A DNA stretch of 64,000 nucleotides from Haliotis rubra (taxonomy: Eukaryota). A model generated the notes under the pieces. It saw nothing but the letters and a program-made list of their open reading frames with translations. It made no database searches and had not been told where the DNA came from. Where the stretch lies: assembly GCF_003918875.1 (NCBI RefSeq), contig NW_025767515.1, positions 62,001 to 126,000 on the forward strand. Direction: 5' to 3'. Below are positions 6,601 to 41,100 of this stretch, piece by piece (positions within the stretch are counted from its first letter, which is position 1; each line of letters opens with the position of its first letter). Both the position numbers and the translations under genes were made by a program.

Positions 6601-9600
6601 ACTAAAAGTGTTCCAACCAAGCTCAATGAAAGTGTTCCTACCGACCTCACTAAAAGTGTTCCTACCAACTTCACTAAAAGTGTCCCAACCAAGCTCAATG
6701 AAAGTGGTCTTACCAAGCTCAATGAAAGTGTTCCAACCAAGCTCAATGAAAGTGTTCCAACCAAGCTCAATGAAAGTGTTCCTACCAACCTCACTAAAAG
6801 TGTTCCAACCAAGCTCAATGAAAGTGTTCCTACAGAGCCTCACTAAAAGTGTTCCAACCAAGCTCAATGAAAGTGTCCCAACCAACCTCAGTAAAAGTGT
6901 TCCAACCAAGCTCAATGAAAGTGGTCTTACCAAGCTCAATGAAAGTGTTCCTACCAACCTCAGTAAAAGTGTTCCAACCAAGCTCAATGAAAGTGGTCTT
7001 ACCAAGCTCAATGAAAGTGTTCCAACCAAGCTCAATGAAAGTGTTCCTACAAAGCTCAATGAAAGTGTTCCTACCAACCTCACTAAAAGTGTTCCAACCA
7101 AGCTCAATGAAAGTGGTCTTACCAAGCTCAATGAAAGTGTTCCAACCAAGCTCAATGAAAGTGTTCCAACCAAGCTCAATGAAAGTGGTCTTGCCAAGCA
7201 CTATGAAAGTGTTCCTGCCAAGCTCAATGAAAGTGTTCCAACCAAGCTCAATGAAAGTGTTCCAACCAACCTCAGTAAAAGTGTTCCAACCAAGCTCAAT
7301 GAAAGTGTTCCTACCAACCTCAGTAAAAGTGGTGCTACCAACCTCAGTAAATGGTCCTACCAACCTCAGTGAAAGTATTCCTACTAAGCTCAGTGAAAGT
7401 GTTCCTACTAAGCTCAGTGAAAGTGTTCTTGCCAACCTCAGTAAAAGTGTTGCTGCTATTAAGCACTTTGAAAGTGTTCCTGCCAAGCTCAATGAAAGTG
7501 TTTTGCCAAGCTCAATGAAAGTGGTCTTACCAACCTCAGTAAAAGTGTTCCAACCAAGATCAATCAAAGTGTTTTTTGACAAGCTCAATGAAATTGTTCC
7601 TACCGACCTCAGTGAAAGTGTCCCAACCAAGCTCAAGTAGAAGTGTTCCTACGACCTCAGTGAAAGTGGTCCTACCAAGCTCAATGAAAGTGGTCTTACC
7701 AAGCTCAATGAAAGTGTTCCTATCAACCTCACTAAAAGTGTTCCAACCAAGCTCAATGAAAGTGGTCTTACCAAGCTCAATGAAAGTGTTCAACCAAGCT
7801 CAATGAAAGTGTCCCAACCAAGCTCAATGAAAGTGTTCCAACCAAGCTGAAAGTGTTCCTACCAACCTCAATGAAAGTGTTCCTACCAACCTCACTAAAA
7901 GTGTTCCAACCAAGCTCAATGAAAGTGGTCTTACCAAGCTCAATGAAAGTGTTCCAACCAAGCTCAATGAAAGTGTCCCAGCCAAGCTCAATGAGAGTGT
8001 TCCAGCCAAGCTCGAGAAGTGTTCCTCTGAGACCTCAATGAAAGTGTTCCTACCAACCTCACTAAAAGTGTTCCAACCAAAGCTCAATGAAAGTGGTCTT
8101 ACCAAGCTCAATGAAAGTGTTCCAACCAAGCTCAATGAAAGTGTTCCTACCAAGCTCAATGAAAGTGTTCCTACCAACCTCACTAAAAGTGTTCCAACCA
8201 AGCTCAATGAAAGTGGTCTTTCCAAGCTCAATGAAAGTGTTCCAACCAAGCTCAATGAAAGTGTTCCAACCAAGCTCAATGAAAGTGGTCTTGCCAAGCA
8301 CTATGAAAGTGTTCCTGCCAACCTCAGTAAAAGTGTTCCAACCAAGATCAATCAAAGTGTTTTTGACAAGCTCAATGAAATTGTTCCTACCGACCTCAGT
8401 GAAAGTGGTCCTACCAAGCTCAATGAAAGTGTTCCTACCGACCTCAGTGAAAGTGGTCCTACCAAGCTCAATGAAAGTGTTCCTACCGACCTCAGTGAAA
8501 GTGTTCCAACCAAGCTCAATGAAAGTGGTCTTACCAAGCTCAATGAAAGTGTTCCTACCAACCTCACTAAAAGTGTTCCAACCAAGCTCAATGAAAGTGG
8601 TCTTACCAAGCTCAATGAAAGTGTTCCAACCAAGCTCAATGAAAGTGTCCCAACCAAGCTCAATGAAAGTGTTCCAACCAAGCTCGAAAGTGTTCCTACC
8701 AAGCTCAATGAAAGTGTTCCTACCAACCTCACTAAAAGTGTTCCAACCAAGCTCAATGAAAGTGGTCTTACCAAGCTCAATGAAAGTGTTCCAACCAAGC
8801 TCAATGAAAGTGTTCCTACCAAGCTCAATGAAAGTGTTTCTACCAACCTCACTAAAAGTGTTCCAACCAAGCTCAATGAAAGTGGTCTTTCCAAGCTCAA
8901 TGAAAGTGTTCCAACCAAGCTCAATGAAAGTGTTCCAACCAAGCTCAATGAAAGTGGTCTTGCCAAGCACTATGAAAGTGTTCCTGCCAAGCTCAATGAA
9001 AGTGTTCCAACCAAGCTCAATGAAAGTGTTCCAACCAACCTCAGTAAAAGTGTTCCAACCAAGCTCAATGAAAGTGTTCCTACCAACCTCAGTAAAAGTG
9101 GTGCTACCAACCTCAGTAAGTGGTCCTACCAACCTCAGTGAAAGTATTCCTACTAAGCTCAGTGAAAGTGTTCTTGCCAACCTCAGTAAAAGTGTTGCTG
9201 CTATTAAGCACTATGAAAGTATTCCTGCCAAGCTCAATGAAAGTGTTTTTGCCAAGCTCAATGAAAGTGGTCTTACCAACCTCAGTAAAAGTGTTCCAAC
9301 CAAGATCAATCAAAGTGTTTTTGCCAAGTTCAATGAAAGTGTTCCTACCGACCTCAGTGAAAGTGGTCCTACCAAGCTCAATGAAAGTGTTCCTATCGAC
9401 CTCAGTGAAAGTGGTCCTACCAAGCTCAATGAAAGTGTTCCTACCGACCTCAGTGAAAGTGTTCCTGCCAAGTTCCATGAAAGTGTTCCTACTAAACTTA
9501 ATGAAAGTGTTCATGCCAAGCTCAATGAAAGTTCTTGCCAAGCTCAATGAAAGTGTTCCTACCGACCTCAGTGAAAGTGTTCCTGCCAAGTTCCATGAAA

Positions 9601-12600
9601 GTGTTCCTACTAAACTTAATGAAAGTGGTCCTACCAAGCTCAATGAAAGTGTTCCTACCGACCTCAGTGAAAGTGTTCCAACCAAGCTCAATGAAAGTGG
9701 TCTTACCAAGCTCAATGAAAGTGTTCCTACCAACCTCACTAAAAGTGTTCCAACCAAGCTCAATGAAAGTGGTCTTACCAAGCTCAATGAAAGTGTTCCA
9801 ACCAAGCTCAATGAAAGTGTCCCAACCAAGCTCAATGAAAGTGTTCCAACCAAGCTCAATGAAAGTGTTCCAACCAAGCTCAATGAAAGTGGTCTTACCA
9901 AGCACTATGAAAGTGTTCCTGCTAAGCTCAATGAAAGTGTTCCAACCAAGCTCAATGAAAGTGTTCCAACCAACCTCAGTAAAAGTGTTCCAACCAAGCT
10001 CAATGAAAGTGTTCCTACCAACCTCAGTAAAAGTGGTGCTACCAACCTCAGTAAGTGGTCCTACCAACCTCAGTGAAAGTATTCCTACTAAGCTCAGTGA
10101 AAGTGTTCTTGCCAACCTCAGTAAAAGTGTTGCTGCTATTAAGCACTATGAAAGTGTTCCAACCAAGCTCAATGAAAGTGTTCCAACCAAGCTCAATGAA
10201 AGTGTTTCTACCAACCTCACTAAAAGTGTTCCAACCAAGCTCAATGAAAGTGGTCTTTCCAAGCTCAATGAAAGTGTTCCAACCAAGCTCAATGAAAGTG
10301 TTCCAACCAAGCTCAATGAAAGTGGTCTTACCAAGCACTATGAAAGTATTCCTGCCAAGCTCAATGAAAGTGTTCCAACCAAGCTCAATGAAAGTGTTTT
10401 TGCCAAGCTCAATGAAAGTGGTCTTACCAACCTCAGTAAAAGTGTTCCAACCAAGATCAATCAAAGTGTTTTTGACAAGCTCAATGAAATTGTTCCTACC
10501 GACCTCAGTGAAAGTGGTCCTACCAAGCTCAATGAAAGTGTTCCTACCGACCTCAGTGAAAGTGGTCCTACCAAGCTCAATGAAAGTGTTCCTACCTACC
10601 TCAGTGAAAGTGTTCCTGCCAAGCTCAATGAAAGTGTTTTTGCCAAGCTCAATGAAAGTGGTCTTACCAACCTCAGTAAAAGTGTTCCAACCAAGATCAA
10701 TCAAAGTGTTTTTGACAAGCTCAATGAAATTGTTCCTACCGACCTCAGTGAAAGCGGTCCTACCAAGCTCAATGAAAGTGTTCCTACCAACCTCAGTGAA
10801 AGTGGTCCTACCAAGCTCAATGAAAGTGTTCCTACCGACCTCAGTGAAAGTGTTCCTACCAAGCTCAATGAAAGTGTTCCTACTAAGCTCAATGAAAGTG
10901 TTCATGCCAAGCTCAATGAAAGTTCTTGCCAAGCTCAATGAAAGTGTTCCTACCGACCTCAGTGAAAGTGTTCCTGCCAAGTTCCATGAAAGTGTTCCTA
11001 CTAAACTTAATGAAAGTGTTCCTGCCAAGCTCAATGAAAGTGTTATTGCCAACCTCAGTAAAAGTGTTCCTACCAACCTCAGTAAAAGTGTTCCTACCAA
11101 CCTCAGTGAAAGTGATCCAACCAAGCTCAGTGAGAGTATTTTTGCCAAGCTCAATGAAAGTGTCCCTACCAACCTCAATTAAAGTTTTCATATTTTTCAA
11201 AGTTTACAATATGATGCAAAAACTAGAAACTCAAAACCAAACTTTGCAAAGCCCCATTCTTTAGACAAAGAGGCCTTTTCCAAACTTCAAAACATTAATT
11301 TGAAAAAGTTATTAATTGAACAAACATTTCTAAGTTCATATTTGTAAATTGCTGTAATTCTTGAAAACAATATAATATCAAAATACACCTCTACCAGTAG
11401 ACAAAGAAGGTGGTCCCCAAATGTGAAAACAATCCAAACAAGAGTTTTCCAGTTATTAGTTGAACAAAAATGTCTTTGGACAGACAGATGGACAGGTGGA
11501 ATTTAGTTGGTATAACCTTTCTAGGTTTGGGGGTAAAAACAATCAAACTGTTGACCAGGTACTTAAACTGCTTTCAGACACTGAGTTCAACTATCAGTGT
11601 CCAGGAGAAATGTTTATAATATTCCATAATATCATGTCCACTCCAGTATACAGAGGTCCCACATAAAGTATGTCCTCAAGACACAGTTTTCTGTTTGGTA
11701 TGAGGCAGAAGAAGTTTCTGCTGCAGACTGCCAGATTAATTTGGGCATTATGCCAATTTGTTTTTGTTGATTCTACATCAACAGATGAGGAATGTAAAAA
11801 TAGAAACTCCTGTAGCTGCATGTAACCCAGTATCTGGTTACCATGGCAAATGGCTACACTTGTGGTTTTGTTATACCCGGTAGATACAGAGTATAGATAG
11901 CTCCCCGTACACCATGTTGTACAAAGTGAATCATAATGCTTGGATAACCCTTATAACCCATGTACCATCATTTCAGTCGAACCAATCTTTACTATCACAC
12001 TTTCAAGGGATATTTGGATCTATCCATCATACACAAAACTGATTCCCATAACATGTATCATGAAGATCTGTATAGGCTGACAGTTCTGATTGTCATCATC
12101 AAAAGTCGTGTAGAATATAGTTAGAATGTAACAGAATCTGTCTTCCATTATCATAATTATTTGCAGGCGTTTCCTTCCACCTCATGTCATTACATATATC
12201 ACATTGATGACGTTATAAAAAATATAACTTCCACTGATAAAGTGACCATAGAAAGTCAATTATACCATACAAACAACTGTGAAGATAGGTGTACATGAAT
12301 CATACTTAGAGATACTTTCATCGCTGTTAACAGCGACTTATGCTTCATATTACAATGACTACAGTATTATACATGCACATAACCATGACAACAGTAACAA
12401 TGTGTCATAAACATGATATATGTAGATATAGAATGTACAGCATAATAAATACTATAACAACTTACTGCAAAGGAACCCCAACAGTCCGTAGAAACGTCCA
12501 CACAGATCCTAGAAAACATGCAAAATAGAGCCACTGAGTAATACAAAAAAAAATATACACAGACAATACTATTAATGGCCATAAATATACAATACATAAG

Positions 12601-15600
12601 GATTATACACACACAGTAAAACATACGGTTCCATAATTTCATTTCTGTATTTTCCAGCATATAGATAGATAATCCTGATAATCTATAATCCTGATGATTA
12701 CATAACACTAAAAATATCCTTATCCCAAAAATCCTGGGAATCATCACAACCAAAGTTATGATATCCACTGTTTCAAGCAGCATATCACTATTCATGGTAT
12801 TAGACCATGTTGTTATTGCCTGAAGAAATGCTACGCCCTTACCATGGTATATTCAGTTTGTAAGGTCAACAATGTTGGGTTGAAGTTGAAGGGACCTATG
12901 AAGATACTTCGTGTTATCCAACGCCAAAGGATGACTAAATTAGGAATATGCAGGGACCATGCTTTTACTTCAAGATAACTGTAAGTTCAACAAATCAAAG
13001 TTGGACACAGTGGTGTTTGTCTGTACTAAAGGTTTACTGCATTGTTAATCCATCAGCAACAGTTAATACCACAGACTGACTAACATGTGAATAATGAAAC
13101 AAACTGCTTCCCTAGCCAAGACCACAAGAAATGTTTTTTCAAGTTATTTCTCCAGAGAATCCTATCATACTAAATAGTAAAGTCATGTCAGTCTGTAAAT
13201 TCACTCTCTAGTCCAAACCAATGCGAAACAACACTTAATCTTCAGTCAGATATAATGAATGCATTGAGTACCATCAAGTTAAAGTTAGCCACTAGATTGG
13301 TAGTTCCAACAAGTCATAGACTGTCACAACACACCAAACATGTTTTTTAAAGTTACTTTCCACAACATCCTACAACACAGAGTAAGTGAGTGAGTTTAGT
13401 TTTAAACCGCTTTTGCCGATATTCCAGCAACATCATGCCAGGGGACACCAGAAATGGGCTTCACACATTGTACCCACATGGGGAATTGAACCCATGTCTT
13501 CAGAGTGAACGCTCTAACCACTAGGCTACCCCACTGCTCCCCTACTAGTCAGAACTGTAGTGTACAGACAAGCCATGTTCAGTCTGAGTAATCACCATCT
13601 AGGAGAAACAACCAACATGTAAGCACAATACTCCTTGGCCTGATATAACATTAGCCTGTGTGAGTCAGATCTCATCTATCAAGTACCACTAATGAACGGA
13701 CTCTCGTCAGTCCTAGTAAAATGTTTATGCAAGTTATTTCAACACCAGCTTGAATCAATCAATCATCAATACTAAGATATAAAGCAGTTAACGGTTACCC
13801 TACTGATACAGTGAAATAGCCATTTTGTACATGTAGCAATAAATACTAAGTGTAGACTGAGATGTTTGAAGGGAAGCAGACCATGAAGCATAGTGCCTCT
13901 TTAAGACCAGCCAGATCACAGTTGTAAGTTGGTCAAGTGTTACACATACTGGTATGCTGCAAACACTGAGGTCACATGACCCATCTTAGTTGCCCCTATC
14001 AACAAACATTTGGTAACCGACTTTCTCTGCCACAAACTACTTACATCATGATCCCAAGTCTGTTATCATGTTAACTGTGGCATTAGTTTCATAAGCTTCT
14101 GTTGTCACTGCTGACTAAAAATATTTTCCATTAATGTTCTATCAATTTTTCTGCGATTATCAAACAACAAATGGGAAAATTCTTGATGACTATCTCCTTA
14201 ATGCATGAAAGTTAATACTTGTAAACAATCCAACTCACTTAGAGATGCTGATGCTAACCGTCCAACAATAGAAACCTTGTCTTTGTCCCTTGGACTTCTG
14301 GTCTGGAAATGTAACAGTGAACAAAAGGTCATCAAGGTTAGTAACACAACTCAATACCACATCCCATCTGTGTCATCATCTTACTTAGTCAATTAGTCAA
14401 AAAAGTCAAAAAGGTTAGCACTGGTAAATTATATACTTGGTGCTAAAAAAATGGGCTGGAAAAAAAAAGACAGTACAATTGTGCATATATGATATAGAAC
14501 ATATCATGTATATATGTATGTTTCATGTGCGGTATTATAAGCAGGAGATTTGGAGGGGGAAAGACCTCTGAAATCAAAGAATATAAGAACAGTTAAGAAG
14601 CTTTTGATAAATAGAAATACTCCAATAGAATTATCATTGTTCACAAAGCACACACCGACTTAACAACCAGAACTTGCAGATTTGTACATCCAGCAATTGC
14701 TAATATTGATATAATGATAATATATACTAACAATATTACATACTGATGTTTGAGATTCATCTGGTGGCAGATGAAATGAATACATGCTAGGAAAATCATC
14801 TAGCGAGAAATTATGAACCTGAAAATGAATGTGCTACTGCCAAAATGATACATCTTGTCTCTTCAAAAATACACAGTCCGTTCAAAAGATTTCTCCCTGG
14901 AATCTGACGAATATGCAAGAAGAGAGCAATAATTCCCAACTCAGCAATGGTCAGTAACTGTAAAATGGCATTGAACAATGTTATATTAACTGTAAAATGG
15001 AGTGGAATAACATTACATGAACTTAAAATTGTGAGGAATAATGATATGTTGCCTGTACAAAGTACTAAAATGGCATTGAATAATATTATATCAACTGTAA
15101 ATTGGCATTGAATAATGTTTTCATCAAGCTTATGTTTGTTTGCTAGTTGTTTAACACAGCAGCCAGATATTACAGTTATTTCATGACAATCTGCAAATAA
15201 CCACTCTGGACCAGGCAAACAAAGAACTGAATGTTCTGGAACATCCCACACCTTGAAGGTATGATGACAGGCACTCATGAATGCAACAACAATGTGTATC
15301 CCTGTGCTCTAAAAATTTATATACAGCATTTGAATTTGGTGAGTTAGAACCATACAGATGATAAGTAAAAAGAAGCTAGAGCAACAAAAGTGATAAAACA
15401 AAAATAAACACCTGGTGCTTTACCTTAGAAAAGCGAATTCCTGGCAATCCAGTTATAACAGATGACAGTGAATGAATTGATTTCACATACTTTGAGCTCA
15501 TCATTTTCACAAATATCTGTACTAGACATGAAAAAATCACTCTCATGAAAGCTCATTTTAAAATTCCACTGTACGCCCATGCTTGGTGATGGCAACACGT

Positions 15601-16876: not shown

Positions 16877-19740
16877 GTATTTGTTTCATCGTTTGTAATT
16901 TAAGCCAGATTTATCCATGATATTATTACTGTTGTCTCTGGTAAAATCAGATGGTTGTTCTGTTGTTTTTACAATATATGAATTGTTGCAAATTCCATGG
17001 TATTAGAACCTGTTGTTACACTAAATAAGCGTGATTTTTTGCTCTCTCCAGATTGAAGTCAAGTTAGTGACAACACAAAATGCTCAACATTTCTTCAACC
17101 CAGGAGAACTGACTGTTAAAGTTCATACAGATGCTGAGGAATGGGAGGTATATGACCCTAAAAACATTAGAACATTTTTGGAGCTGAATGTTGGTTGCAA
17201 GGTTGCAGCATTAAACTTTATAAGGAAATATGAATATATATAGGTGATAATTACACACAAACAGATTGCTTTTCTTATTAAGTTATAACTAGTCAATATT
17301 AATTAATGATCTCTGATTCTATCAGTTGGTGAAATATTGACAGATGCCAGAAAGAAATAGAAAGAATTTCTCTTAAAAACAGGTTATCCTCACTTGACAA
17401 AAGAGGAGGAGGGGTAGCCTAGTGGTTAAAACGTTCGCTCATCACACCAAAGACCAGGGTTCAATCCCCCACTATGGTTCAATACTAGTATATGAAGCCC
17501 TTTTCTGGTGGCCCCCACTGTGAAATTGCTGGAATATTGCTAAAAGCGGCATAAAACAAAACTCACTTGACAAAAATGATGACATTTTGTTTTTACTGTG
17601 GTCTAACTAGAAACTTGTAGGATCATTATAATCAAAGTCCAAACTTACTATGTTTCTTGCATATGTGTAAATCAAGTATCTAATAATAATACTCTGTTTG
17701 ATATTGCCACAGTTTCAGTGGATCAGCTGTCTTGTATTGTTTCAATGTTTCCAGAGTTGGAAAAGAATTGGAGACCCAGTTCTCCACATTGAACTGAGGA
17801 GATGGGCCGACTTAATGGTCATTGCACCTCTAGATGCAAACACCATGGCAAAGATCTCAAATGGCATTTGTGACAATTTGTTGGTAAGTTGATTGTTACT
17901 TGTTATGTAGGAACAAGTGAGAAACAAAGAGTCTACTCCATCAAGCGGCACAATATCCAGTTGTTTACACACCCTGGCATGTTTTAATAAGCAACAGTTT
18001 TCTTTCACTGGGTCAGAATCGAAAGCACCAATGTCAAGCACTCACTAAAAAAATTGTTCTTGTGTTTCTTATCACATGTACAATCATCAGAAACATGTGT
18101 GTTTGTCACAAGAATTGATTTGATAAATAAGATAATAAGATTCATTGATTTGGTTGATGCGTCATTGTACACAAAGGCATGGTTCATGCTCCTAACATCA
18201 ATAACTGGTGTGTCTCACGTATTTACAGGCTGTCATGTTGAATATGTACAAACATGTTATACAAACTAATAACAAAGACTTGAAAAAACTTAAATTTTGA
18301 ACTTATATCTATAATGTCAGCAGAATATTTCTCATGTGATAAGATGTTGGTATTGAGTAATTGCATATATAATAAATATGATCAGATGATATATGTTGAT
18401 AATTAAAATATTATCCTATATATCATACAATACTTGTATCTGGTGGTATTGGTGGATTCATGACGTGTGTTGGTTTGCTGTTATCTGTTCCCACTTTGAG
18501 CAACACAATAATAATCTCTTGTATTATAATGATGGAAGTGTTTCTACTGTTAGACATGCATTGTCCGGGCATGGGACATGAAGAGCCCTCTACTGTTTGC
18601 TCCTGCAATGAATACCCACATGTGGGAGCACCCACTGACAGCTCAACACCTCTCAACACTGAGGGGCCTGGGCTATAGGGAGATCCCCTGCATCAAGAAG
18701 ACACTGGCATGTGGAGATACAGGTTGAGTTGATAATTTGGGAAGGTGAAATGGGGACAAAGAACATATACTGGGCCACTTATTTGACAATTGTTGAAGAA
18801 ATAAATATTTTCTCAGAAAGAGAAGCCAGAAACATTTATGGGAGACATGCAACAGAGGTATTTCAGGGCATCAAGCCAATCAATTGTTTAATATTTTTAA
18901 CCCTTGAAGAAGTATTCCTTTTACCAATATTACTAAACAATTAAATATCTTCTTTTTTTTTAAATAATTACATAAAACTGATAACTAATGTAAACCTGAG
19001 ACAGAAGGTCAGCATACTTTGGTGGGTGTGGGGAAGGTGGTTGGGAAGGTTATGCACTGTTGACAGATCAGCTGTAGTGTAACCTGTTAGTGCACCATGT
19101 TGACAGATCAGCTGTAGAGTAGGCTGTTAGTGCACCGTGTTGACAGATCAGCTGTAGAGTAGGCTGTTAGTGCACCGTGTTGACAGATCAGCTGTAGAGT
19201 AGGCTGTTAGTGCACCATGTTGACAGATCAGCTGTAGAGTAGGCTGTTAGTGCACCGTGTTGACAGATGAGCTGTAGAGTAGGCTGTTAGTGCACCATGT
19301 TGACAGATCAGCTGTAGAGTAGGCTGTAAGTGACTGACTGAGTTTGGTTTTACGCCGCTTTTAGCAATATTCCAGCAACATCACAGCGGATCACTAATGT
19401 AAACCTGAGACAGAAGGTCAGCATGCATTGGTGGGTGAGGGGAAGGTGGTTGGGAAGGTTATGCACTGTTGACAGATCAGCTGTAGAGTAGGCTGTTAGT
19501 GTTGACAGATCAGCTGTAGTGTAGGCTTTTAGTTGGAAAATGTTAACCAAAATGTTTTTTCATGCATGTATATCTGCTATCATGAAAATGCCAGTTGTTG
19601 TTAGACTGTTGTGCAGTTTAGGTCTGTGTGTTTCAGGGTTTGGAGCAATGGCAGAGGTGGAGACAATTGCAGCACAAGTTATGGCAGCTCTACTGCCTCA
19701 GCAACAACACCCCTCATCAAGTCAACATGAATCAAAATGA
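16781..19740 (+). CDS. PPCDC: Phosphopantothenoylcysteine decarboxylase (HFCD flavoprotein, CoA biosynthesis), complete, 5 coding exons
   Basis: Exons 16781-16876, 17052-17147, 17755-17883, 18554-18722, 19637-19740. Motifs TGSVASIK, VLHIELRRWAD, PLDANTMAK, GICDNLLTCIVRAWD, PAMNTHMW, LACGDTGFGAM. AATAAA near 20102. Confidence 0.96.
17052..17147 (+). CDS. PPCDC: PPCDC coding exon 2
   Basis: IEVKLVTTQNAQHFFNPGELTVKVHTDAEEWE. Confidence 0.92.
17403..17561 (+). mobile_element. tRNA-derived SINE, family A, with 14-bp TSD
   Basis: A/B boxes; TSD CTCACTTGACAAAA at 17389-17402 and 17562-17575. Confidence 0.9.
17755..17883 (+). CDS. PPCDC: PPCDC coding exon 3
   Basis: SWKRIGDPVLHIELRRWADLMVIAPLDANTMAKISNGICDNLL. 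Confidence 0.95.
18554..18722 (+). CDS. PPCDC: PPCDC coding exon 4
   Basis: TCIVRAWDMKSPLLFAPAMNTHMWEHPLT...KKTLACGDT. Confidence 0.95.
19057..19328. repeat. 40-bp minisatellite (about 7 copies)
   Basis: TGTTGACAGATCAGCTGTAGAGTAGGCTGTTAGTGCACC[A/G] in PPCDC intron 4. Confidence 0.92.
19637..19740 (+). CDS. PPCDC: PPCDC last coding exon
   Basis: GFGAMAEVETIAAQVMAALLPQQQHPSSSQHESK*. Confidence 0.92.
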
Positions 19741-23426: not shown

Positions 23427-23483
23427 TGACGTCACAATACTTCTTACGTCATGATGACAGCATGTTTTTCGTCTGTGACGTCA
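23427..23483 (+). promoter_or_regulatory. Cluster of three CRE/ATF sites
   Basis: TGACGTCA 23427-23434, TTACGTCA 23444-23451 and TGACGTCA 23476-23483, 90-150 bp upstream of the ATG at 23573. Confidence 0.7.
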
Positions 23484-23572: not shown

Positions 23573-25132
23573 ATGGCCGGAACTATTCCAGACATCCATA
23601 TTGATGAGGACTGTGAAGTGGCCATGTCTGAAGCATTCGAGGAATTCTGCCAGAGATGTGATCAGCTTTATAAACGAGTTGCTCATAGCCCTGCGCCACC
23701 GCAGAAAGAATTCAAAAAGGACTCTCGGTACTGGCTGCACAAGAACAGGAACAGACGATCACAGCAGAAATACAGTGACGATGGCGAGCTCACATACGAC
23801 CAAGTCTTCTCTGTCATTGGCAAGAGTGGAAGGCGCTTCAAGAAAGATTCCCGTGTGTGGCTTCACAAGTCATCCGACAGAGCGTACATAACAAGCCAGT
23901 TACAGAAGAACTGCAACTGCAACGGCGTTCCCCGTACCAACGTTGACAAAAGGGTAACCCTTAGGAACAAGGTCACCACTACAAACCCAATATTTCTAAA
24001 TTGTAGTATGAAAGTTCCTGACCAGCTCTGTGAAAAGTTGAGAGATGCTGGATGCGGCCGTAAACGGAAGAGAGGAGAATTTATGTCGTCTGCCCCGTCC
24101 TCCCCTGCAAAGAAAACCGAATCTAATCTTGCTACGCTGTCACGCAGTCTGGACAGGGATGTGGGAATTACAAGATGTGTTAACAGGATGGATGGCGATG
24201 CAATTGGCCTCCTCCGTACCGCCTCAACTGAGACAGTTTATGGCAGCTCATCGGATGAAGTCCAGCAGAAGTCACCATGGCCAGACTTTCAAGCCATGTC
24301 TGATAACACGTCCTCCAACAAGCTGGACGGTGACCACTCGCCAGCTTCGTCGGATGGAAGGTGACACCTTCTGTAGTTTGTGAACGCATTTTTAAGAAAT
24401 ACGAAACATATATACCTCACATTAATTTCTCTTCATGATGGATTTATGCCTGGGCATTGTCCGACCTGTGGTGGAATCTCATTAACACACACACACACAC
24501 CCCTATTAAGTGACCGTTGTTGAAACTCTTGTGATATCAACCGCAATATTTTCTTAGGAACCAAACAAAGTTAATCATAAAGCGTGTCTGTTTGTAATTT
24601 GTGTGCCTATTTCTATTTAAAGTGTTACATATTCGATCTTGAGTAGCTGGACCCCTGCTGGTTTTCTGGGGGTAAGCTTGATATAGATGTTTCTGAAGGG
24701 GCCAGCCAATTGAGTTGTGTTTCTTAGTCCATACACATTGTGATTTTTGGCTAGTTAAAAGACTGTTGGAATTGACCCCAAACGCTGTAAAGATCTCTTA
24801 TTCTTTAGTATGGCCATAGACCATAGAGACCAAAAGGAAAAAACAATCTTAACACTATAGAGAATATTTACGTTATTATTTTCAGCACCCGCTTGATCAA
24901 TGAGCAATGCCATGATTCCGCGCCAAATTCAGACACGTCACGAGGGGATCTGATGGACGACCAGGTGTCACTGCATTTCATAGTAGAGGAGTCGAGGTAC
25001 GACCCCCCGATAACACCCCCCGGAAGTCCCTGGCAAGAGCAATGTGGGGAGATGGACGTGGAAGTAGAAGCTGCCTTCTCCGAGGACAGCAATTCAGAAT
25101 TACACTGGCGAAACTTCAACACCAACAACTAG
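23573..25132 (+). CDS. Uncharacterised two-exon protein (344 aa)
   Basis: Exon 1 is 23573-24360 (long GC-elevated ORF, AG|GTGACA donor). Exon 2 is 24886-25132 (ttttcag acceptor, phase 2, in frame with the 24893-25132 ORF). Internal repeat FKKDSR[Y/V]WLHK with synonymous divergence. Confidence 0.8.
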
Positions 25133-26334
25133 GCAATGTGCTATCTAATTGATGTAATTGAAACTGAATAACAGTGAATGTTCTAAAACACGCACACAAA
25201 CCAAAAGCACAGCGATTACGGTAAATTCAAAAATACTCTCACCACTTTTTAAGAAAATGGTTCAGGTGTATTGCAACATATTTGTATTTGAAAATATATC
25301 ATTAAGTTAATAGATTCAGTCTATGTTGCTACACGTTACTGGTTAATTTTGTATTGTTTTTCTTTATTTCATTGTTGTCCTTTTCCTTATGTTTGTTCCA
25401 TACTGCTAAATGTTTAAATCGGTGAAAGAAAGAATTGAACAGTAATTGTAACACGAATGCCCAGTATGAGACATTTTTCCTGAATCAGTCATATACCTTT
25501 TTGGGCATGTTTGTATTTCAACATTTACAATTCCCGAAAAGAATATTACCGCAAAATATGTACTACTCAACTACACGAAGCAGTTAAGCACCAGCAGAGC
25601 GCATACATGAAAAGCACATTCTAGTTAAGAGTGCCAGTGACAATGTTTGCCCACTAGATTTAAACTTCTTGCAATATTTTAAATAGCACTTTATCAATGT
25701 AATGGTTCAAACATCAACATAATATTTTTATATAAAATATGAAACCATATTGAATCTGTTGTCCTTTATCTTTTTCCCTGTTAGATTATCAGATGTAAAG
25801 GGTCGGGAATCCCATAAGATAGTTACTGTTTCTGTGTTTATAAGTGAAAGTAAAGTTCATACCATAACAATTTGTATGATACAACAGGAAACTGACCAAT
25901 CACACAAGAATGTTGATTGGTGTCAGCATTTGGATTGGTAAATATTTTACGTCTGTTTCAAACACTTTTTCAGTTGTGAGTGAGTGAGTATGGTTTGAAG
26001 CTGCTTTTAGCAATATTCCAGCAATATCACGGTGGGGAAACCAGAATTTTCAGTTGTGAACATTACGTTAATGTAACAGGGTTAAAACCAGACTATTCGC
26101 CTGCAGTGGGATTAATCATACTCATACCCTTCTTGAACAATTTACCATCGGTTTCAGCTATCAGTTCCTGCAGCCCATTCCCCTCCATGCATCCTCCACA
26201 CCACCTGTGATTTAATACTTGTAGAAGCAGCAAACATACTTTCCCATACTTACTCACGGGGAATCTCCATCAGTAAACATCTCAGTAGGAAGAATAGTTT
26301 AACTACTACATGCCACATGTGTACAAAGTTTGTT

Positions 26335-26742
26335 TGATGTTTAAAGCTGCACTCAGCAATATTCCAGCTATATGGCAGAGGTCTGTAAATAATCGAATAT
26401 TCCAGCTATATGGCGGAGGTCTGTAAATAATTGAATATTCCAGCTATATGGCAGAGGTCTGTAAATAATCGAATATTCCAGCTATATGGCGGAGGTCTGT
26501 AAATAATCGAATATTCCAGCTATATGGCAGAGGTCTGTAAATAATCGAATATTCCAGCTATATGGCGGAGGTCTGTAAATAATCGAATCTGGACCAGACA
26601 ATCCAGTGATCAACACCATGAGCATTGGGATATGATGACATGATCAACCAAGTCAGCGAGTCTGACCACCCAATCTCATTAGTCGCATTAGCAGCGAGAA
26701 TGTGTTGCTGAAGACCAATTCTAACCCGGGTCTTCATGGGTG
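26335..26742 (-). mobile_element. Family B SINE-like element containing 6 x 38-bp internal tandem repeat
   Basis: Homology to the copies at 295 and 30423; repeat spans about 26358-26586. Confidence 0.85.
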
Positions 26743-28097: not shown

Positions 28098-31000
28098 CTG
28101 GCAGTGTTGAGGAAATGCTATTTGCTAAAATATACTTGACAACTGAAATATATTACTTTCATTCAAAATATAGAAGTTTATTCTTAAGTTAAGTGCAAAG
28201 TTAAGTCTAGAATATCTGCTGTCTGTTATGAAAACATGCAGTGAACCATATGAGTCTGGTCAGCCAATCCGTTAAGCAACACCTTGCCCTCTTATAACCC
28301 AAATATGTTGCTGGGGGTCTAATCCTACCAGGACAAAGGACTGGGCACTGATAGAAAGGATACTTCATGTTGGTTCCCTCTGGGTTGTAGTCATCCAGGC
28401 GGATGTGGAGTCGGCCTGCCAGCCTCTCCGTTGCCTGCCTCATCATCAGCTCCTGGAGGACAGGAACATTATTCATAAACATCAGTTGTATGCCTCTGTA
28501 CATAAACAGTAGACTGCCTCCAATCAGAGACCATATATGGTATCTGCTCCAATATAACCATTAGTAGAATGCCTCTAACATAAATATCAGTAGAATGCCT
28601 CTAACATAAATATCAGTAGAATGCCTCTAACATAAATATCAGTAGAATGCCTCTAACATAAATATCAGTAGAATGCCTCTAACATAATATCAGTAGAATG
28701 CCTCTAACCAGAGACCATATATGGTCTCTGCTCTAACATAAATATCAGTAGATGCCTCATCACATGAGCATCAGTTGCAGACATGTATAGGTGAATTGTA
28801 TCAGACTTAACAAAGTGGTAACCTGTACATGTGTCCCAATAACCTGTGCAGGTGTGTCCCACAATCCCCATGGGTGTCTGTCTCCATATCCTGTGTATCC
28901 CATTCCACCCCTATGTGCATCACTCCTATTCTGTGGATGTCCCCATAATGCAATGTTTCCCCCACCCCTATCATCCTACCCTGTGTGTGTAGCCTTTACC
29001 CCTTGTGTGCCCCCACCTACCTACCCTGTGTGACCCCACCTACCTACCCTGTGTGACCCCACCTACCTACCCTGTGTGCCCACCAATCCCATGCTTCAAC
29101 CCCCTGTGAGCCGCCCTACCCCATGCTGCTCCCTCTGCTGTGTGACGAGTTGCAGGGACTCCTCCACGGATATCAGCACACTCTTGTCATGCTTGTAGTC
29201 GGGCAGTACCACTGCAGACTCTTCCTTGGGCTTGGGATTTGAGGAGTCCATTGCACTCTCCGTCTTCCTCTCAGTCCTAGCTAACCCTCCTGGTGTAGGA
29301 CTGTCCTTTACGTTGCCCTGTTTTGATCTGAACTTGTACACTTCTGGTAAATCTTCAACCTTTGATATTTTCAAAGTGCTGAAGGTAAGGGTGACCAAAT
29401 TAGCTCTTCAAATATTGACACAAAATATCTTTTTTAACAAATTATTTTGTCTGTATGATGTGTACTTCACAGTATGAAACAATGACAAGTACATCAATAC
29501 CACATGACATGCTTACAGCATATACAAACAGAATCTGAAATATATGCCTGAACAATCCCTTTCAAAATATTAAACTTGAAGATAATACAAATACAGTCAT
29601 GTCTGACAAAATTATTCACAATAATATCTAACATGTCTCGTGTATCAGGTAATGTTTAAAGGCCTTATACAAAAATCAGGTCCATCATTCAGATAACTTT
29701 TCAACAGACAAAAGGATAATTTACTGAACTGTACATCAGAGACATGACTCAACATCTGAACCAGTATCATTACATAGGAGGAATAAATGAGAACCTAAAC
29801 AAAGAATTTACATAACTTTACCTGAACAAAGACAATTTACATAATTTTTCATCTGAGGTATAATTCATTATCTGAATACAGATTTACCTGTTTGGTTTGA
29901 AAGTTTTCTTGTGTGGAGTTTGTTCATTTGCCTTTTTGATGACACGTTCATAACTGTTGACGTATACATCCTCTCTGCCAGATACAGGCTGATCAGTAGA
30001 TATAGTCACTCTCTCCAACACCTCACTCAGTCTCTCACTAACATCCATAGCACTGGAATTATCTCCCGTCAATTCAATGTTCTTCCTTGTGACCAACACT
30101 TCACACAAATCAGCTTCAGTTTTGGAGATGTCTCCCTTTTGATGCACTTGATTCGTCCCAAAAGTTTGCACTTTCTTGTCGCTATGTGTGTTTGTGGTTT
30201 GTTTCTGTACAAGATCTGATATTTTCACACCTTCTAACTTTGAAGCTGCCTGATCCACTTCTTCCCTCTGAGTAATGAGTGTTCTCAAAGTTTCGGCAAA
30301 CATTTTCACTTTGACTCCCTTGTCAGGTAAAGTTTGAAGAAATTTCCTGTAGATCAAACATAATATTTGTGAGAAAAAATCACTGGAACCAAACCTTTTT
30401 CACATGAACACACGAATCTACAGTGAGTGAGTGAGTTTAGTTTTACGCCATACTCAACAATATTCGAGTTATATGGAAGAGGTCTGTAAATAATCAAGTC
30501 TGGACCAGACAATCCAGTGATCAACAGCATGAGCATTGATCTGTCCAATTGGGAACCGATTACATGTGTCAACCAAGTCAGCGAGCATGACCACCCGATC
30601 CCATTAGTCGCCTCTTATGCATGAATCTACAGCAAAATAAACATTGGAACCCAGACATTTGTTTGCATTTTATATAACTTTGAATTTGTTTGCTTATCAA
30701 ATAAACACTAAATTGACAGTGTTTGTTTATCAATATACACTATGTCAACAGTGTTAATAAAATGGTCCCCATGGCAACAGTGGTTAACACACAATCACAA
30801 TGTCAACAATGTATTCACTTTGTTGACAATATTTATCAAATTGTCACCATGTCAACAGTGTTTGTTTATCCCATAATCACAATGTCAACAAGAAGACAAA
30901 GTCATCAATATCCCCCGCAATGGCAAAATACTCTTCATGATTATGTCTACGAGTTATGATTATGTCAAATGTTTAGATGTGTATATAGAAAAGTGGAAGG

Positions 31001-38101: not shown

Positions 38102-41100
38102 GTAAGTTTGAAACTTTTTATGAAGTTTATGCCTAAGTAATCTCCTGTTAACCGTTACCCAAGGCATTATGCATGGGGTAATACTGTTTACTATAGGGTA
38201 TGGGTTTTATATTGACCCAAAAACCTCTCTGAAGGTTCTACCAGCCTGACAATAATGTTTATATAAGAGTCCTAGTTACTGGCCTTCTTAAGGGATGTAA
38301 ACATTTATGTCTGTAGATTTAAGAGTGAACCTGTTTGAAAGTGTGGTAATTTGTTATATTTAGTTATGCACACTCAGCTACAGTTATGACATCCAATGGG
38401 AAAGCAATGATTAAATTCTCCAGTCATTGTCTTGGTATATTTGTTCATACATGACAATGACACTGTGGTTAGACTAAATCTGTCTAGAAATGTATCAAAC
38501 CATGGACTTTGTTAATCATCCATGATAAAACAATACAAGTATCTGATATCAATCACAATCAATATTCAGTATCAGCCATGTGGATATTTAGATGTAGTGC
38601 AAAGCACATAGAGATCGTCAAGCTGAACTTTGCAAGGACTATGTTTCATTTTTGATGACACTATATATATATTTGGTGCACATAGTATATTGTTGTACAT
38701 ATAGTCATCAATGTTTGTTTTAGGTTGTTTTCAGCCATTTTGACTCAGTGTATGAAAAGTATGTAAAAGTTGGAACACTAAGGAAGGAGAACAATACACG
38801 GGTGAACAACTTTATTTAAATAGGAGCGACATTTTGGTTTGTATTCCAGCACCATTATCAAGCAAGTGAAGAACAGAGTATGGATTGTGAGGAAATGGTT
38901 TTATAGTTGATTGGATCAGGTGAGATAGCTTCTTTGAGTTTCCAGATTTTGAAGTCTTTCAGGTTGGTTTTTAAAGCTTGGGCTTTGTCCCACAATATGC
39001 TGTGGTCGGGATTGTCTATTAGATATTGTCTGGTAAGGATGATTTAGAGTCAAGTTTAGATACACTGAATTCTAATGATACCCTTTCATTTGGGTTATGA
39101 TTGGTCTGGATGTTTCACCAAATAAAGCACATCCACAATTGCTGTTATTCCTCTTGAAAACAGGCCAGTATAGTTGTAGTTTTCAAGAGGAATGTATCAC
39201 TTGGCAAATACAATTGGCCTAGTTAAGGATGAGGTCAGCACAAAGCTGATAAAATTGCTCTGTGATGCTGTATACAGGTATCTCTTCCATGCCATGTATT
39301 TACATGTGTAAAAGGGCATAAATTCAACTCTTGTTTGTCATCTCTTCTTTCAGTAAACAAATTGGTCCAGGATGCTGGATTTGATAAATACTAAATCTAT
39401 AAACCAGTCTTTGATTTTGCAACACAGATTAAATTGCCTGATGTGTTAAGATGCTGTACAACAGGCCTCTTTACAATACTTTCAGCATTTTCTTGGGTAT
39501 ACACTTTCTATTTTACAAAATCTTAAGTTTTTGAATTTTAAAGATTGAGTCCCATCCTGGATTTGAATCCACACTCTTAGAGTGTGTCACCAAATCACCA
39601 GCATGCAAAGCCAGTGATGTAACCCACTTAGGCACCATCAACAAGAATGGAAGTCTGACACCGACAACTCTACATCACGTAGATAATCATATTTACAATT
39701 TACGAATACGTTGGGGTTCATATTTAATGTAGGCATTGAGTATTTGCTCACACGTTATCATTCACATGGGCTTTTGATGGGTTTCTTTATGTATCCAATA
39801 TATTTATACTAAGTTCAACTCAGGGTCTCGTTTATTGTGGTTTATAACTGATGACTAAGTCTTCTGCTTATATGCTGTTTGTGTTATTTCCAATTGGCAT
39901 AACCTTGTGTGTTGGCTCAAATGAGTTTCATTTTGAATAATAGGTAACAGATATCTGTGTCACAATCAGTCAGATGTTGCACATCTGTGCATTGTTCACC
40001 ACAGTAGAGTTCATACACATCTCTGTAGTGGAAAGAGGAGCAGTGGCTATTATCTGAGAAAAGGTACTCTAGGTGCCTGTTTCTGCATGCTATGCTGTTT
40101 GGGTATCATAATTCTTCATGGAGACTTGTACTCCAGAAAGTCAACTTGATCTGTGATATGGACGAAAGAAATATTTTAGAAATATAAATAATATTAGGAT
40201 GAGTACCAATGGAAGCCAGAATTTAGGTGCCCTTTGTAGAAAAGTTTGGCAAGTGAACTTGGTCCTTAGATTTCAAAATTGTTATTTATACGGAAAAATA
40301 TATGGCCTCTTGTCTCTGGTAACATTTCCTTTGTTAATGTTTGGTAAGTGTTTAGATACCTGTGAAGATACAGCTTGGAGTGGTGAGATCCTCACTGATG
40401 AAATGTACAGAGCTGATGGATTGTTCTTGCACACTTGTTTAAACCAATACCCTGTATATTGTAAAATCACGACAAGAATGCTGATTATGTGTCTGGTGTG
40501 TTGCTGCAGCTGTCAATTCAGAGAGAGGTATACTGCTTACTTTATCCTTATGAAAGTTCTTATGTGCAAAATGAAACTAAACATTAAAAAGTTGATTTAA
40601 TAACTCGAAATATATTACTGATTGTGAAATGTGAAGGTCGAAAACATGTTTTTATCTTAGATAATAACATGGCAGATTAACCTTTTAATACATAGATCAT
40701 CTCTTGAGCTCCTTACATAATTGACTGAAAATGTACCTATTGGTTAATGTGGGTTATATAGTTAAGTATACATCACCCTGGCACAGGAATAACCTGTGTT
40801 CACAAAGTGCAACAGAAACTGTTGTTATGAGATGACAAGTAGTTTACAGTAATAAGCACAGGGCATACTTAGTGTCTTATCAAACAGATAAATGAAATAA
40901 CAGGCTAGCAAGAAACAAGTTCAGTTAAAATTGAGGAAGTGTTTGGCTGGCAAATACACTGCAAAATCTGAACATCATCCCTTTTGTGTGAAACAACACA
41001 AATCTTATATTTACATAAACAATCCCGTGTAACACAGATCCTCATTAAAAGTAGTCATTTAAATAAGTATACCTGTGTTCCACAGTCATGTAGATGTACT

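What the first reader, a model, noticed from the sequence alone, without database searches (positions are those of the whole stretch)
23573..25132. Orphan two-exon gene with a duplicated FKKDSRxWLHK motif under apparent protein-level constraint
Seen: a 344-aa spliced ORF matching no family I recognise. An 11-aa motif occurs twice (23711-23743 FKKDSRYWLHK; 23837-23869 FKKDSRVWLHK). Ten of 11 residues are identical, yet 6 of those 10 codons differ synonymously (aaa/aag, aag/aaa, gac/gat, tct/tcc, cgg/cgt, ctg/ctt). Inference: this is an old duplication kept by selection on the peptide, so the protein is probably real and carries a possibly undescribed binding motif. The rest looks mostly disordered, with a basic RKRKR stretch (about 24059-24073) and an acidic C-terminus.
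Basis: partly seen in the sequence, partly recalled or inferred. Interest (0 to 1): 0.8.

Follow-up and report, generated by a model that had tools for sequence, protein, structure and literature searches.

The report
Mollusc-wide disordered protein, invariant FKKDSRxWLHK motif
This is a real two-exon abalone gene from an undescribed protein family found across snails and mussels: floppy, probably nuclear proteins whose only unchanging part is one or two copies of a short FKKDSRxWLHK peptide that most likely docks onto an unknown conserved partner.

Summary
The ORF, the GT-AG intron (24361-24885), both motif copies and the six synonymous codon differences are all as described.

**The gene is real.**
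- The spliced product equals RefSeq "uncharacterized protein LOC124261253" of Haliotis rubra.
- Orthologues exist in three other Haliotis species. For two of these the loci were examined, and they show the same phase-2 intron and dN/dS 0.33-0.37 (about 0.15 around the motifs).
- Lottia has the same intron position and phase. It also has the same neighbours: a PPCDC-like flavoprotein gene and a POLR2M/GCOM2-like gene.

**It is not a species orphan.** About 60 proteins carry [FY]KKD[S]RxWLHK[S/N]:
- two copies in every named gastropod lineage found;
- one copy in Mytilus and unionid mussels;
- one or two copies in unlabelled contigs.

The rest of the protein diverges to about 20% identity.

**No known family fits.** There was no consistent Pfam match, no NCBIfam match, only chance-level PDB and Atlas hits, and no paper naming the motif or the gene ids.

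**Structure and function.** AlphaFold models the protein as disordered except for an N-terminal helix. The isolated motif unit folds as a short β-hairpin followed by coil. A conserved basic cluster, a TPxxSP motif shared with Mytilus and a conserved CRE cluster suggest an inducible nuclear regulator. Function remains inferred.

A spliced Mytilus transcript contig exists.

The parts
23427..23483 (+). Promoter-proximal CRE cluster: TGACGTCA at 23427 and 23476, and TTACGTCA at about 23447. It lies 90-146 nt upstream of the ATG.
   Evidence: Two of the only three perfect TGACGTCA sites in the 64-kb window are here. The proximal site is invariant in three Haliotis species. The other two sites are kept as full or near sites. 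Detectable conservation with H. cracherodii begins at 23461.
23573..24360 (+). Coding exon 1 (residues 1-262 plus two bases of codon 263).
   Evidence: It is identical to the first part of P0001. dN/dS is below 1 in all segments.
23609..23683 (+). N-terminal amphipathic acidic helix (residues 13-37). It was seen only in the two closest lineages, Haliotis and Gigantopelta.
   Evidence: It is the only segment with pLDDT above 90 in the AlphaFold model. It aligns with Gigantopelta and with P0004.
23711..23743 (+). Motif copy 1, FKKDSRYWLHK (residues 47-57).
   Evidence: It keeps its own codon pattern in three Haliotis species.
23801..23875 (+). Motif unit 2 (residues 77-101): the hairpin-forming lead-in QVFSVIGKSGRR, then FKKDSRVWLHK (23837-23869), then SS.
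   Evidence: Single-copy bivalve proteins resemble this extended unit. AlphaFold on the isolated unit gives strands at unit residues 4-6 and 12-14, with pLDDT about 80 over the first 20 residues.
24059..24073 (+). Basic cluster RKRKR (residues 163-167), a candidate classical nuclear localisation signal.
   Evidence: It is invariant in Haliotis. An equivalent K/R cluster lies at the aligned place in most members.
24361..24885 (+). Phase-2 GT-AG intron.
   Evidence: The same position and phase occur in H. asinina, H. cracherodii and Lottia gigantea.
24886..25132 (+). Coding exon 2 (residues 263-344 plus the stop codon); acidic tail.
   Evidence: For this segment dN is 0.08-0.21 and dS is 0.16-0.63.
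25010..25033 (+). ITPPGSPW (residues 305-312), a TPxxSP motif that fits the FBW7/Cdc4 phosphodegron pattern.
   Evidence: It is invariant in the three aligned Haliotis sequences and also present in H. rufescens. Mytilus has ITPCGSPW at the same relative position. It is absent from most other members.
25133..25549 (+). Conserved 3' flank, probably 3' UTR.
   Evidence: The blastn match to H. cracherodii continues to 25549 and then stops. No canonical AATAAA occurs on the + strand before 27589.

Best explanation
**Shown.** Positions 23573-25132 (+) hold a real, selectively maintained, two-exon protein-coding gene. It is the Haliotis rubra orthologue of an undescribed family found in gastropods and bivalves. 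Members have no signal peptide and no transmembrane segment, and they are predicted to be almost wholly disordered. They diverge quickly everywhere except in one or two copies of a unit of about 25 residues. That unit is a short lead-in (consensus Y-x-I-I-D-x-x-G-R-x), then the near-invariant [FY]KKDSRxWLHK[S/N][S/T], then a basic tail.

**Inferred mechanism.**
- The protein is a nuclear regulator or adaptor, because of the conserved RKRKR-type cluster.
- The invariant unit is a docking module that folds on binding to a deeply conserved partner. Two copies in gastropods would give bivalent binding.
- The near-invariant Ser sits in a basophilic-kinase context (K-K-x-S), so phosphorylation may switch docking.
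- In Haliotis, three conserved CRE-type sites just upstream of the start suggest cAMP/CREB-driven induction.
- The C-terminal I-T-P-P-G-S-P-W suggests phosphorylation-dependent turnover.

The partner is unknown.
For: **Gene reality**
- The product is identical to a RefSeq model. Orthologues are 89% (over exon 1; 87% over the full length) and 74% identical.
- The intron is the same in three Haliotis species and in Lottia.
- Nei-Gojobori dN/dS is 0.33-0.37 overall. In the motif segment dN is 0.015-0.039 against dS 0.10-0.34.
- The microsynteny flavoprotein(PF02441) - gene - GCOM2(PF15328) holds in H. cracherodii, in Lottia and in the window. In H. asinina only the GCOM2 side was in view.

**Family**
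- An exhaustive HMMER search and two word searches give about 60 proteins, all unnamed or 'uncharacterized'.
- Invariant columns in 38 full-length members are K, K, D, W, L, K only, with mean column identity 16%.

**Expression in relatives**
- A Mytilus Logan contig carries the uninterrupted 311-aa ORF. The same ORF lies in three blocks over 5.6 kb of the genome.

**Cell location and structure**
- No member has an N-terminal or internal hydrophobic segment.
- The full-length AlphaFold model has mean pLDDT 55.6 and the motifs are coil. The isolated unit is a β-hairpin plus coil with pLDDT 73.

**Other motifs**
- Basic cluster and TPxxSP.
- CREs.
Against:
- Nuclear location, docking, phosphorylation, CREB control and degron function are all inferred from short patterns that also arise by chance.
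- The TPxxSP motif is shared only by Haliotis and Mytilus.
- Full CREs were found only in Haliotis. Mytilus and Lottia have only half-sites near the start, at chance-level counts.
- Ten near-invariant residues are more than a typical linear motif needs. The unit may instead bind nucleic acid or a metal, or form a mini-domain.
- No annotated oyster, scallop, cephalopod or non-mollusc member was found. The partner therefore need not be universal.
Confidence: 0.7

Rival explanations
1. The invariant unit is a nucleic-acid-binding (DNA or RNA) or nucleosome-binding basic-aromatic peptide, not a protein-docking motif. Lys and Arg would contact phosphates, and Phe, Trp and His would stack on or insert between bases.
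For: The unit is strongly basic with three aromatic or imidazole residues, and it is followed by a K/R-rich tail. The proteins look nuclear. Ten near-invariant residues suit a chemically fixed ligand.
Against: An invariant Asp and a near-invariant Ser sit in the middle of the motif, which is unusual for a pure nucleic-acid binder. No similarity to any solved nucleic-acid-binding chain was found. No fold is predicted for the WLHK part.
Confidence: 0.2
2. It is a very diverged member of a family already described in other animals (for example under a vertebrate or fly gene name), missed because only a short motif survives.
For: Disordered regulators often escape sequence searches. The word search covers only a limited range of protein lengths. 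The exhaustive search used a profile of three Haliotis sequences only. Several family members come from unlabelled contigs of unknown taxon.
Against: Both exons gave no Pfam hit at E up to 10. Across 38 members no Pfam family recurred at E up to 1. NCBIfam gave nothing. PDB profile searches gave only chance hits. No paper contains the motif strings or the gene ids. All about 25 named relatives are molluscs.
Confidence: 0.12
3. The xWLH[K]-S-S-basic part mimics the tryptophan (hexapeptide/'ANW') motif by which posterior Hox proteins insert a Trp into the PBX/Exd pocket. The family would then be homeodomain-less PBX partners or competitors.
For: This rests on resemblance only, recalled from memory: a Trp followed by Leu-His and, a few residues on, a basic run, as in paralogue-group 9/10 Hox proteins. 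The motif is near-invariant in proteins that look nuclear.
Against: A profile of 31 motif units against all PDB chains returned only a chance hit to a trypanosome ribosomal protein. As far as I recall, those chains include a Hox-PBX-DNA complex. The invariant FKKDSR half has no Hox counterpart. No homeodomain is present. I could not confirm the Hox sequence from a paper.
Confidence: 0.06
4. It is a prohormone or neuropeptide precursor. The repeated conserved peptide is flanked by Gly plus dibasic sites (G-R-R, K-K), as in molluscan multi-copy peptide precursors.
For: G-R-R immediately precedes copy 2, and K/R pairs are frequent.
Against: No member has a signal peptide. The maximum 10-residue Kyte-Doolittle mean in the first 40 residues is at most 0.78, and no segment is of transmembrane grade. 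The N-terminus is acidic, or is the motif itself (MLPGGFKKDSR...). Dibasic pairs lie inside the conserved peptide, which cleavage would destroy.
Confidence: 0.02
5. It is a spurious ORF, pseudogene or repeat-derived sequence wrongly modelled as a gene.
For: No canonical poly(A) signal lies close to the stop.
Against: The open frame, the intron, dN/dS far below 1, the synteny and the motif are conserved from Haliotis to Lottia and Mytilus. The Mytilus orthologue has a spliced transcript contig. The motif occurs only in this gene in the window.
Confidence: 0.01

Closest known systems
Hox hexapeptide / paralogue-group 9-10 'ANW' tryptophan motif (PBX-docking short linear motif)
   Same: A short, deeply conserved Trp-centred peptide in a disordered region. 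The Trp is followed by Leu-His and then basic residues. This description of the Hox motif is from memory.
   Different: There is no homeodomain. The invariant FKKDSR half is unmatched. The profile search of solved structures gave no Hox hit. Membership fails; a functional analogy is untested.
Small inducible nuclear disordered proteins driven by CRE promoters (immediate-early-type genes such as the IER family)
   Same: A compact gene with few introns, CREs next to the start, a disordered product with a basic nuclear-localisation-type cluster, and a proline-directed phospho-motif.
   Different: No sequence similarity to any Pfam family, IER included, at E up to 10. Inducibility is not tested. 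Full CREs were seen only in Haliotis.
FBW7/Cdc4 phosphodegron of c-Myc, c-Jun and cyclin E (pattern [LIVMP]x0-2-T-P-x-x-[ST])
   Same: The C-terminal P-P-I-T-P-P-G-S-P-W fits the pattern. It is invariant in Haliotis and shared with Mytilus.
   Different: This is only a pattern match. The motif is absent from most family members. No evidence of phosphorylation or turnover was obtained.
Basic-aromatic effector segments regulated by basophilic kinases (MARCKS-type F-x-K-K-S-F clusters)
   Same: A Phe-Lys-Lys-x-Ser core within a highly basic stretch. The Ser lies in a K-K-x-S context.
   Different: There is no myristoylation site or membrane context. The invariant D, W, L, H have no counterpart. 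The comparison is from memory and was not tested.

Membership tests
Any Pfam-A / NCBIfam family | Score above (or near) the family threshold in hmmscan | tested here: not met
   Both exons gave 0 families at E up to 10 in Pfam and NCBIfam. Across 38 family members, no Pfam family recurred in more than 2 members, and the best E-value was 0.0078.
Any protein with a solved structure | Sequence or profile match to a PDB chain | tested here: not met
   The full-length profile gave E 1.1 to a phage portal protein. The motif-unit profile gave E 0.44 to trypanosome mS69 over 13 residues. Both are chance-level.
New FKKDSRxWLHK family (as defined here) | At least one copy of [FY]KKD-x-[RN]-x-WLHK in a soluble protein of about 100-450 aa with low complexity or disorder | tested here: met
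   There are two copies, at residues 47-57 and 89-99. The profile E-value to gastropod relatives ranges from 2e-17 to 5e-4 in a search of 1.8 billion proteins.
New FKKDSRxWLHK family (as defined here) | Orthology shown by gene structure and neighbours | tested here: met
   The phase-2 intron lies after ...SS(D)G in both Haliotis and Lottia. The flanking flavoprotein and GCOM2 genes are the same in both.
Neuropeptide / prohormone precursor | N-terminal signal peptide | tested here: not met
   Kyte-Doolittle scan of 14 members: the N-terminal maximum is at most 0.78 (10-residue window) and the whole-protein maximum is at most 1.14 (19-residue window).
Hox/PBX hexapeptide-bearing homeodomain proteins | Homeodomain C-terminal to the Trp motif | tested here: not met
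   No Homeobox hit in any member.
Hox/PBX hexapeptide-bearing homeodomain proteins | Trp motif binds the PBX/Exd pocket | not testable with these tools
   No complex prediction or binding assay is available here. The profile search of PDB gave no Hox chain.
Classical monopartite NLS | K-[KR]-x-[KR] cluster, conserved in position | tested here: met
   RKRKR lies at residues 163-167 and is invariant in Haliotis. K/R clusters lie at the aligned place in most members. Function is not tested.
FBW7 phosphodegron | [LIVMP]x0-2-T-P-x-x-[STE], conserved | tested here: inconclusive
   The pattern is present in Haliotis (residue 303) and Mytilus (residue 272) at the same relative place. It is absent from the aligned place in most other members.
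CREB-target (CRE-driven) promoter | Full palindromic TGACGTCA sites close to the start, conserved | tested here: inconclusive
   Met within Haliotis: two perfect sites plus one near site, with the proximal site invariant in three species. Not met in Mytilus or Lottia, which have half-sites only at chance-level counts. The Aplysia full sites are inside a coding exon.

The most novel reading that the evidence does not exclude
The 25-residue unit (β-hairpin lead-in plus FKKDSRxWLHKSS plus basic tail) is a previously unrecognised docking module, kept unchanged since before gastropods and bivalves split. It would tether an inducible, short-lived nuclear protein to a core conserved machine. One possibility is that its Trp enters the PBX/Exd pocket as posterior Hox proteins do, making these proteins homeodomain-less modulators of Hox-PBX complexes. 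Docking would be gated by phosphorylation of the invariant Ser.
Probability: 0.08. Interest if true: 0.8.

Novelty: categorically new. Interest (0 to 1): 0.55.

Why it matters
A peptide of about 11 residues has stayed essentially unchanged in every named gastropod lineage found and in mussels, while the surrounding protein has diverged to about 20% identity. That pattern is a strong sign of a specific, conserved molecular interaction, and no database or paper describes this one.

The motif gives a defined, synthesisable handle for finding the partner. A peptide and its W, S or D mutants could be used as bait, opening a mollusc-wide regulatory module to study.

In abalone the gene also has a conserved CRE cluster. 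That makes it a candidate cAMP-responsive gene in a group where CREB-dependent plasticity is classically studied.

The claim of novelty applies to the sequence family and the motif. It does not apply to any demonstrated new mechanism.

Tried and rejected
**Searches that returned nothing useful**
- Pfam and NCBIfam on each exon.
- Pfam on 38 family members: only scattered chance hits.
- PDB sequence and profile searches: chance hits.
- ESM Atlas by features on the whole protein and on the Lottia motif region: no usable hit. Structure rows had TM at most 0.43 to unrelated bacterial clusters.
- Papers. The six RefSeq/JGI gene ids gave 0 papers. The motif strings gave only the unrelated pentamer KKDSR in influenza and other papers. 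A search for the Hox 'ANWL' strings gave only noise.
- The second family-profile word search added only one new unlabelled member, P0072.

**Ideas tested and dropped**
- CREs as a family-wide feature: not supported outside Haliotis.
- Poly(A) signal: no AATAAA or ATTAAA between the stop and 27589.
- Fold searches were not run, because both models are too disordered or too short to give meaningful matches.
- The prohormone reading was rejected for lack of a signal peptide.
- The repeat or pseudogene reading was rejected on the comparative evidence.

**Procedural note**
- No typed joined sequence was sent to any search tool. The exons were searched separately by reference, and the full-length protein was used only through the database id P0001.
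- I did join the window's exons inside scripts, to check the frame, find the junctions and compute dN/dS.
Full report
**1. The observation**

- An ATG at 23573 opens a 263-codon frame that runs into a GT donor at 24361 (AG|GTGACA).
- A pyrimidine-rich acceptor (TTTTCAG|C) precedes 24886, and the frame closes with TAG at 25130-25132.
- Joined in a script only to check the frame, the two exons give 1035 nt and 344 aa.
- The two motif copies sit at 23711-23743 (FKKDSRYWLHK) and 23837-23869 (FKKDSRVWLHK). Ten of eleven residues are identical, and six of those ten codons differ synonymously.

This is far beyond chance. In 300 shuffles of the protein, the best 11-mer pair reached at most 7 identities. 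If codons are drawn independently from this gene's own usage, 5.2 +/- 1.4 of the ten should differ. Six do. The DNA copies therefore retain nothing beyond what the peptide demands.

**2. The gene is real**

- The first word search returned the spliced product letter for letter as RefSeq "uncharacterized protein LOC124261253 [Haliotis rubra]" (P0001). The window is therefore blacklip abalone.
- The same search gave orthologues in H. asinina (P0002, 89% over exon 1; 87% over the full length) and H. cracherodii (P0003, 74%). H. rufescens has one too.
- In both fetched loci, the only GT-AG model that reproduces the database protein has the intron at the same codon and phase.
- Nei-Gojobori estimates on the codon alignment give dN/dS of 0.33-0.37 for the three pairs. 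The segment holding the motifs has dN 0.015-0.039 against dS 0.10-0.34.
- Each motif copy keeps its own synonymous codon choices in all three species. The duplication therefore predates the genus.
- The neighbours are conserved. A flavoprotein (PF02441, PPCDC-like) gene lies upstream on the same strand, and a GCOM2/POLR2M-like gene (PF15328) lies downstream on the opposite strand. This was seen in H. cracherodii; for H. asinina only the GCOM2 side was in view.
- tblastx places the same two genes in the window at about 17049-19737 (+) and 28357-30351 (-).

**3. It is not an orphan: a mollusc-wide family**

An exhaustive HMMER search of 1.84 billion representative proteins, using the three-Haliotis profile, found eight hits at E of 0.001 or better. 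One of the eight is a Haliotis sequence (P0002). All the others carry two copies of the same motif. Cluster look-ups and two profile word searches raised this to about 60 proteins.

| Group | Named members | Motif copies |
|---|---|---|
| Patellogastropoda | Lottia | 2 |
| Vetigastropoda / Neomphalina | four Haliotis species, Gigantopelta | 2 |
| Caenogastropoda | Pomacea, Nucella, Batillaria; Littorina | 2; 1 in the Littorina model |
| Heterobranchia | Aplysia, three Elysia species, Plakobranchus, two Biomphalaria species, Physella, Lymnaea, Candidula, Bradybaena; Bulinus | 2; 1 in the Bulinus model |
| Bivalvia | four Mytilus species, Potamilus, Sinanodonta | 1 |
| Unlabelled ENA and Logan contigs | taxon not determined | 1 or 2 |

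Every name given by a source is "uncharacterized", "hypothetical" or "unnamed".

Lottia shares with Haliotis both the flanking genes and the intron. The intron is phase 2 and lies after ...HSPLSSGA in Lottia and ...HSPASSDG in Haliotis. Orthology therefore rests on more than the motif.

Haliotis and Mytilus also share I-T-P-x-G-S-P-W at the same relative position near the C-terminus.

**4. Anatomy of the conserved unit**

- In 31 non-redundant units, K, K, D, W, L, H, K are invariant and R is nearly so. Position 1 is F, Y or once H. The Ser is replaced (by G, C or H) only in a few first copies. The residue before W is free.
- The second gastropod copy and the single bivalve copy share a longer unit: Y-x-[IV]-[IV]-x-[DN]-x-x-G-[RK]-x-FKKDSRxWLHKS[ST]-x-K/R-rich.
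- In caenogastropods and heterobranchs, copy 1 sits at the extreme N-terminus (M-L-P-x-G-FKKDSR...).
- Spacing between copies varies from 27 to 75 residues.
- Outside the unit, the 38-member alignment has 16% mean column identity, and the invariant columns are the motif only.
- Other features that recur: a basic cluster (RKRKR in Haliotis, KKKKR in heterobranchs, RKNKRR in Mytilus) and a Ser/Thr/Asp/Glu-rich remainder.

**5. No known relative**

- Pfam and NCBIfam give nothing for either exon at E up to 10.
- Pfam on 38 members gives only scattered single hits.
- PDB profile searches give chance-level hits.
- The ESM Atlas gives no usable neighbour.
- The paper library holds none of six gene identifiers. 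It holds none of the motif strings except the unrelated pentamer KKDSR.

**6. Structure**

- With the 38-sequence alignment, AlphaFold2 gives mean pLDDT 55.6 and pTM 0.26. The only confident element is a helix at residues 13-37, a region alignable only with Gigantopelta and P0004. Both motifs are coil at pLDDT 55-66.
- Folded alone with 31 unit sequences, unit 2 gives two short strands (SVI and RFK, a β-hairpin closed by the G-x-x-G-R turn) at pLDDT about 80. The DSRVWLHK part is coil.
- No member has a signal peptide or a transmembrane-grade segment.
- I ran no fold search, because such models give meaningless matches.

**7. Expression**

No reads could therefore be laid on the abalone junction, and this remains the main gap.
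- Indirect evidence comes from Mytilus. A 1048-bp Logan contig (run SRR26849174) carries the uninterrupted 311-aa ORF. The M. galloprovincialis genome has it in three blocks separated by 3.4 kb and 1.3 kb, with GT-AG borders. That contig is a spliced transcript.
- A 1538-bp Logan contig likewise carries an uninterrupted 398-aa Elysia-like ORF. The Aplysia gene has seven coding exons over 10 kb. This is suggestive, but the two are not from the same species.

**8. Promoter**

- Two of the only three perfect TGACGTCA sites in 64 kb lie at 23427 and 23476, with TTACGTCA between them.
- The proximal site is invariant in three Haliotis species, and the others are kept as full or one-off sites.
- Similarity to H. 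cracherodii begins at 23461 and ends near 25549. This probably brackets the transcription unit.
- The feature does not extend across the family. Mytilus and Lottia have only half-sites near the start, at chance-level counts. The Aplysia full sites lie in a coding exon.

**9. How it most likely works**

*Shown:* a conserved, selected, intracellular, largely disordered protein whose invariant part is the unit described above.

*Inferred, in decreasing order of confidence:*
1. Nuclear location, from the conserved K/R cluster.
2. The unit is a docking module that orders on binding, with two copies giving avidity. It has a β-hairpin lead-in and an extended or induced WLHK segment.
3. The near-invariant Ser in a K-K-x-S context is a basophilic-kinase site that could gate binding.
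4. In Haliotis, expression responds to cAMP/CREB.
5. The T-P-P-G-S-P motif is a GSK3/FBW7-type degron that gives a short half-life.

The partner is unknown. A nucleic-acid or nucleosome ligand is a serious alternative, given the charge and aromatics. A resemblance of xWLH-x-S-basic to the Trp motif of posterior Hox proteins is only a lead from memory. The one test available (motif profile against all solved chains) gave it no support.

**10. Verdict**

One correction: the gene is not an orphan but the abalone member of an undescribed family found across gastropods and bivalves.
- The novelty is at the level of the family and the motif. The mechanism is untested.
- No typed joined sequence was sent to any search tool. 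The exons were joined only inside scripts, for frame, junction and dN/dS checks.

Noticed in passing
window 17049-19737 (+), 23573-25132 (+), 28357-30351 (-); L008 (Lottia) 1-1563, 3001-4586, 5482-7586; L001 (H. cracherodii): The gene order PPCDC-like flavoprotein / FKKDSRxWLHK gene / POLR2M (GCOM2)-like is conserved between Haliotis and Lottia gigantea. These are two deeply separated gastropod lineages.
   Followed up: partly
L009 (Aplysia californica) 3001-12946; P0028 vs P0035: In Aplysia the gene has seven coding exons, and one intron falls right after ...SRTWLH|KSS, inside motif copy 2. Isoform X2 (P0035) joins WLHK to a later exon, so alternative splicing changes the residues that follow the motif.
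   Followed up: partly
window 4788-11189: A very large tandem array: a 24-bp unit in about 267 copies with 82% matches. It lies upstream of the PPCDC-like gene.
   Followed up: no
window 45900-48614: A G-rich minisatellite (21-bp unit AGGTTAAGGGGTAGTTGAACG, about 128 copies, with higher-order 42- and 63-bp periods). It produces a GC skew of +0.85 in the 46-48 kb bin.
   Followed up: no
window 57179-60939, 52948-54615, 41076-41866, 49815-50678: Further long tandem arrays: 64 bp x 58 copies, 23 bp x 74, 28 bp x 28 and 174 bp x 5. The window is unusually rich in satellites.
   Followed up: no
window 26329-26741 (includes the 38-bp x 6 tandem repeat at 26358-26588): This stretch matches several separate places, on both strands, in the H. 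cracherodii and H. asinina loci. It is probably a dispersed repeat carrying an internal tandem array.
   Followed up: no
P0060 (Logan contig, Haliotis sp. close to H. cracherodii/rufescens): This 267-aa product is exon 1 read through into the intron. It ends ...SSDGR, like the 263-aa ORF in the window. The contig is therefore genomic or unspliced, not evidence of splicing.
   Followed up: partly
P0046, P0048, P0050, P0051, P0054, P0057, P0072 (unlabelled ENA/Logan contigs): A subgroup of single-motif proteins shares a second conserved acidic motif downstream, roughly S-[LV]-G-D-S-D-A-D-L-[SA]-Y-S-E-E. Their taxon could not be determined.
   Followed up: no
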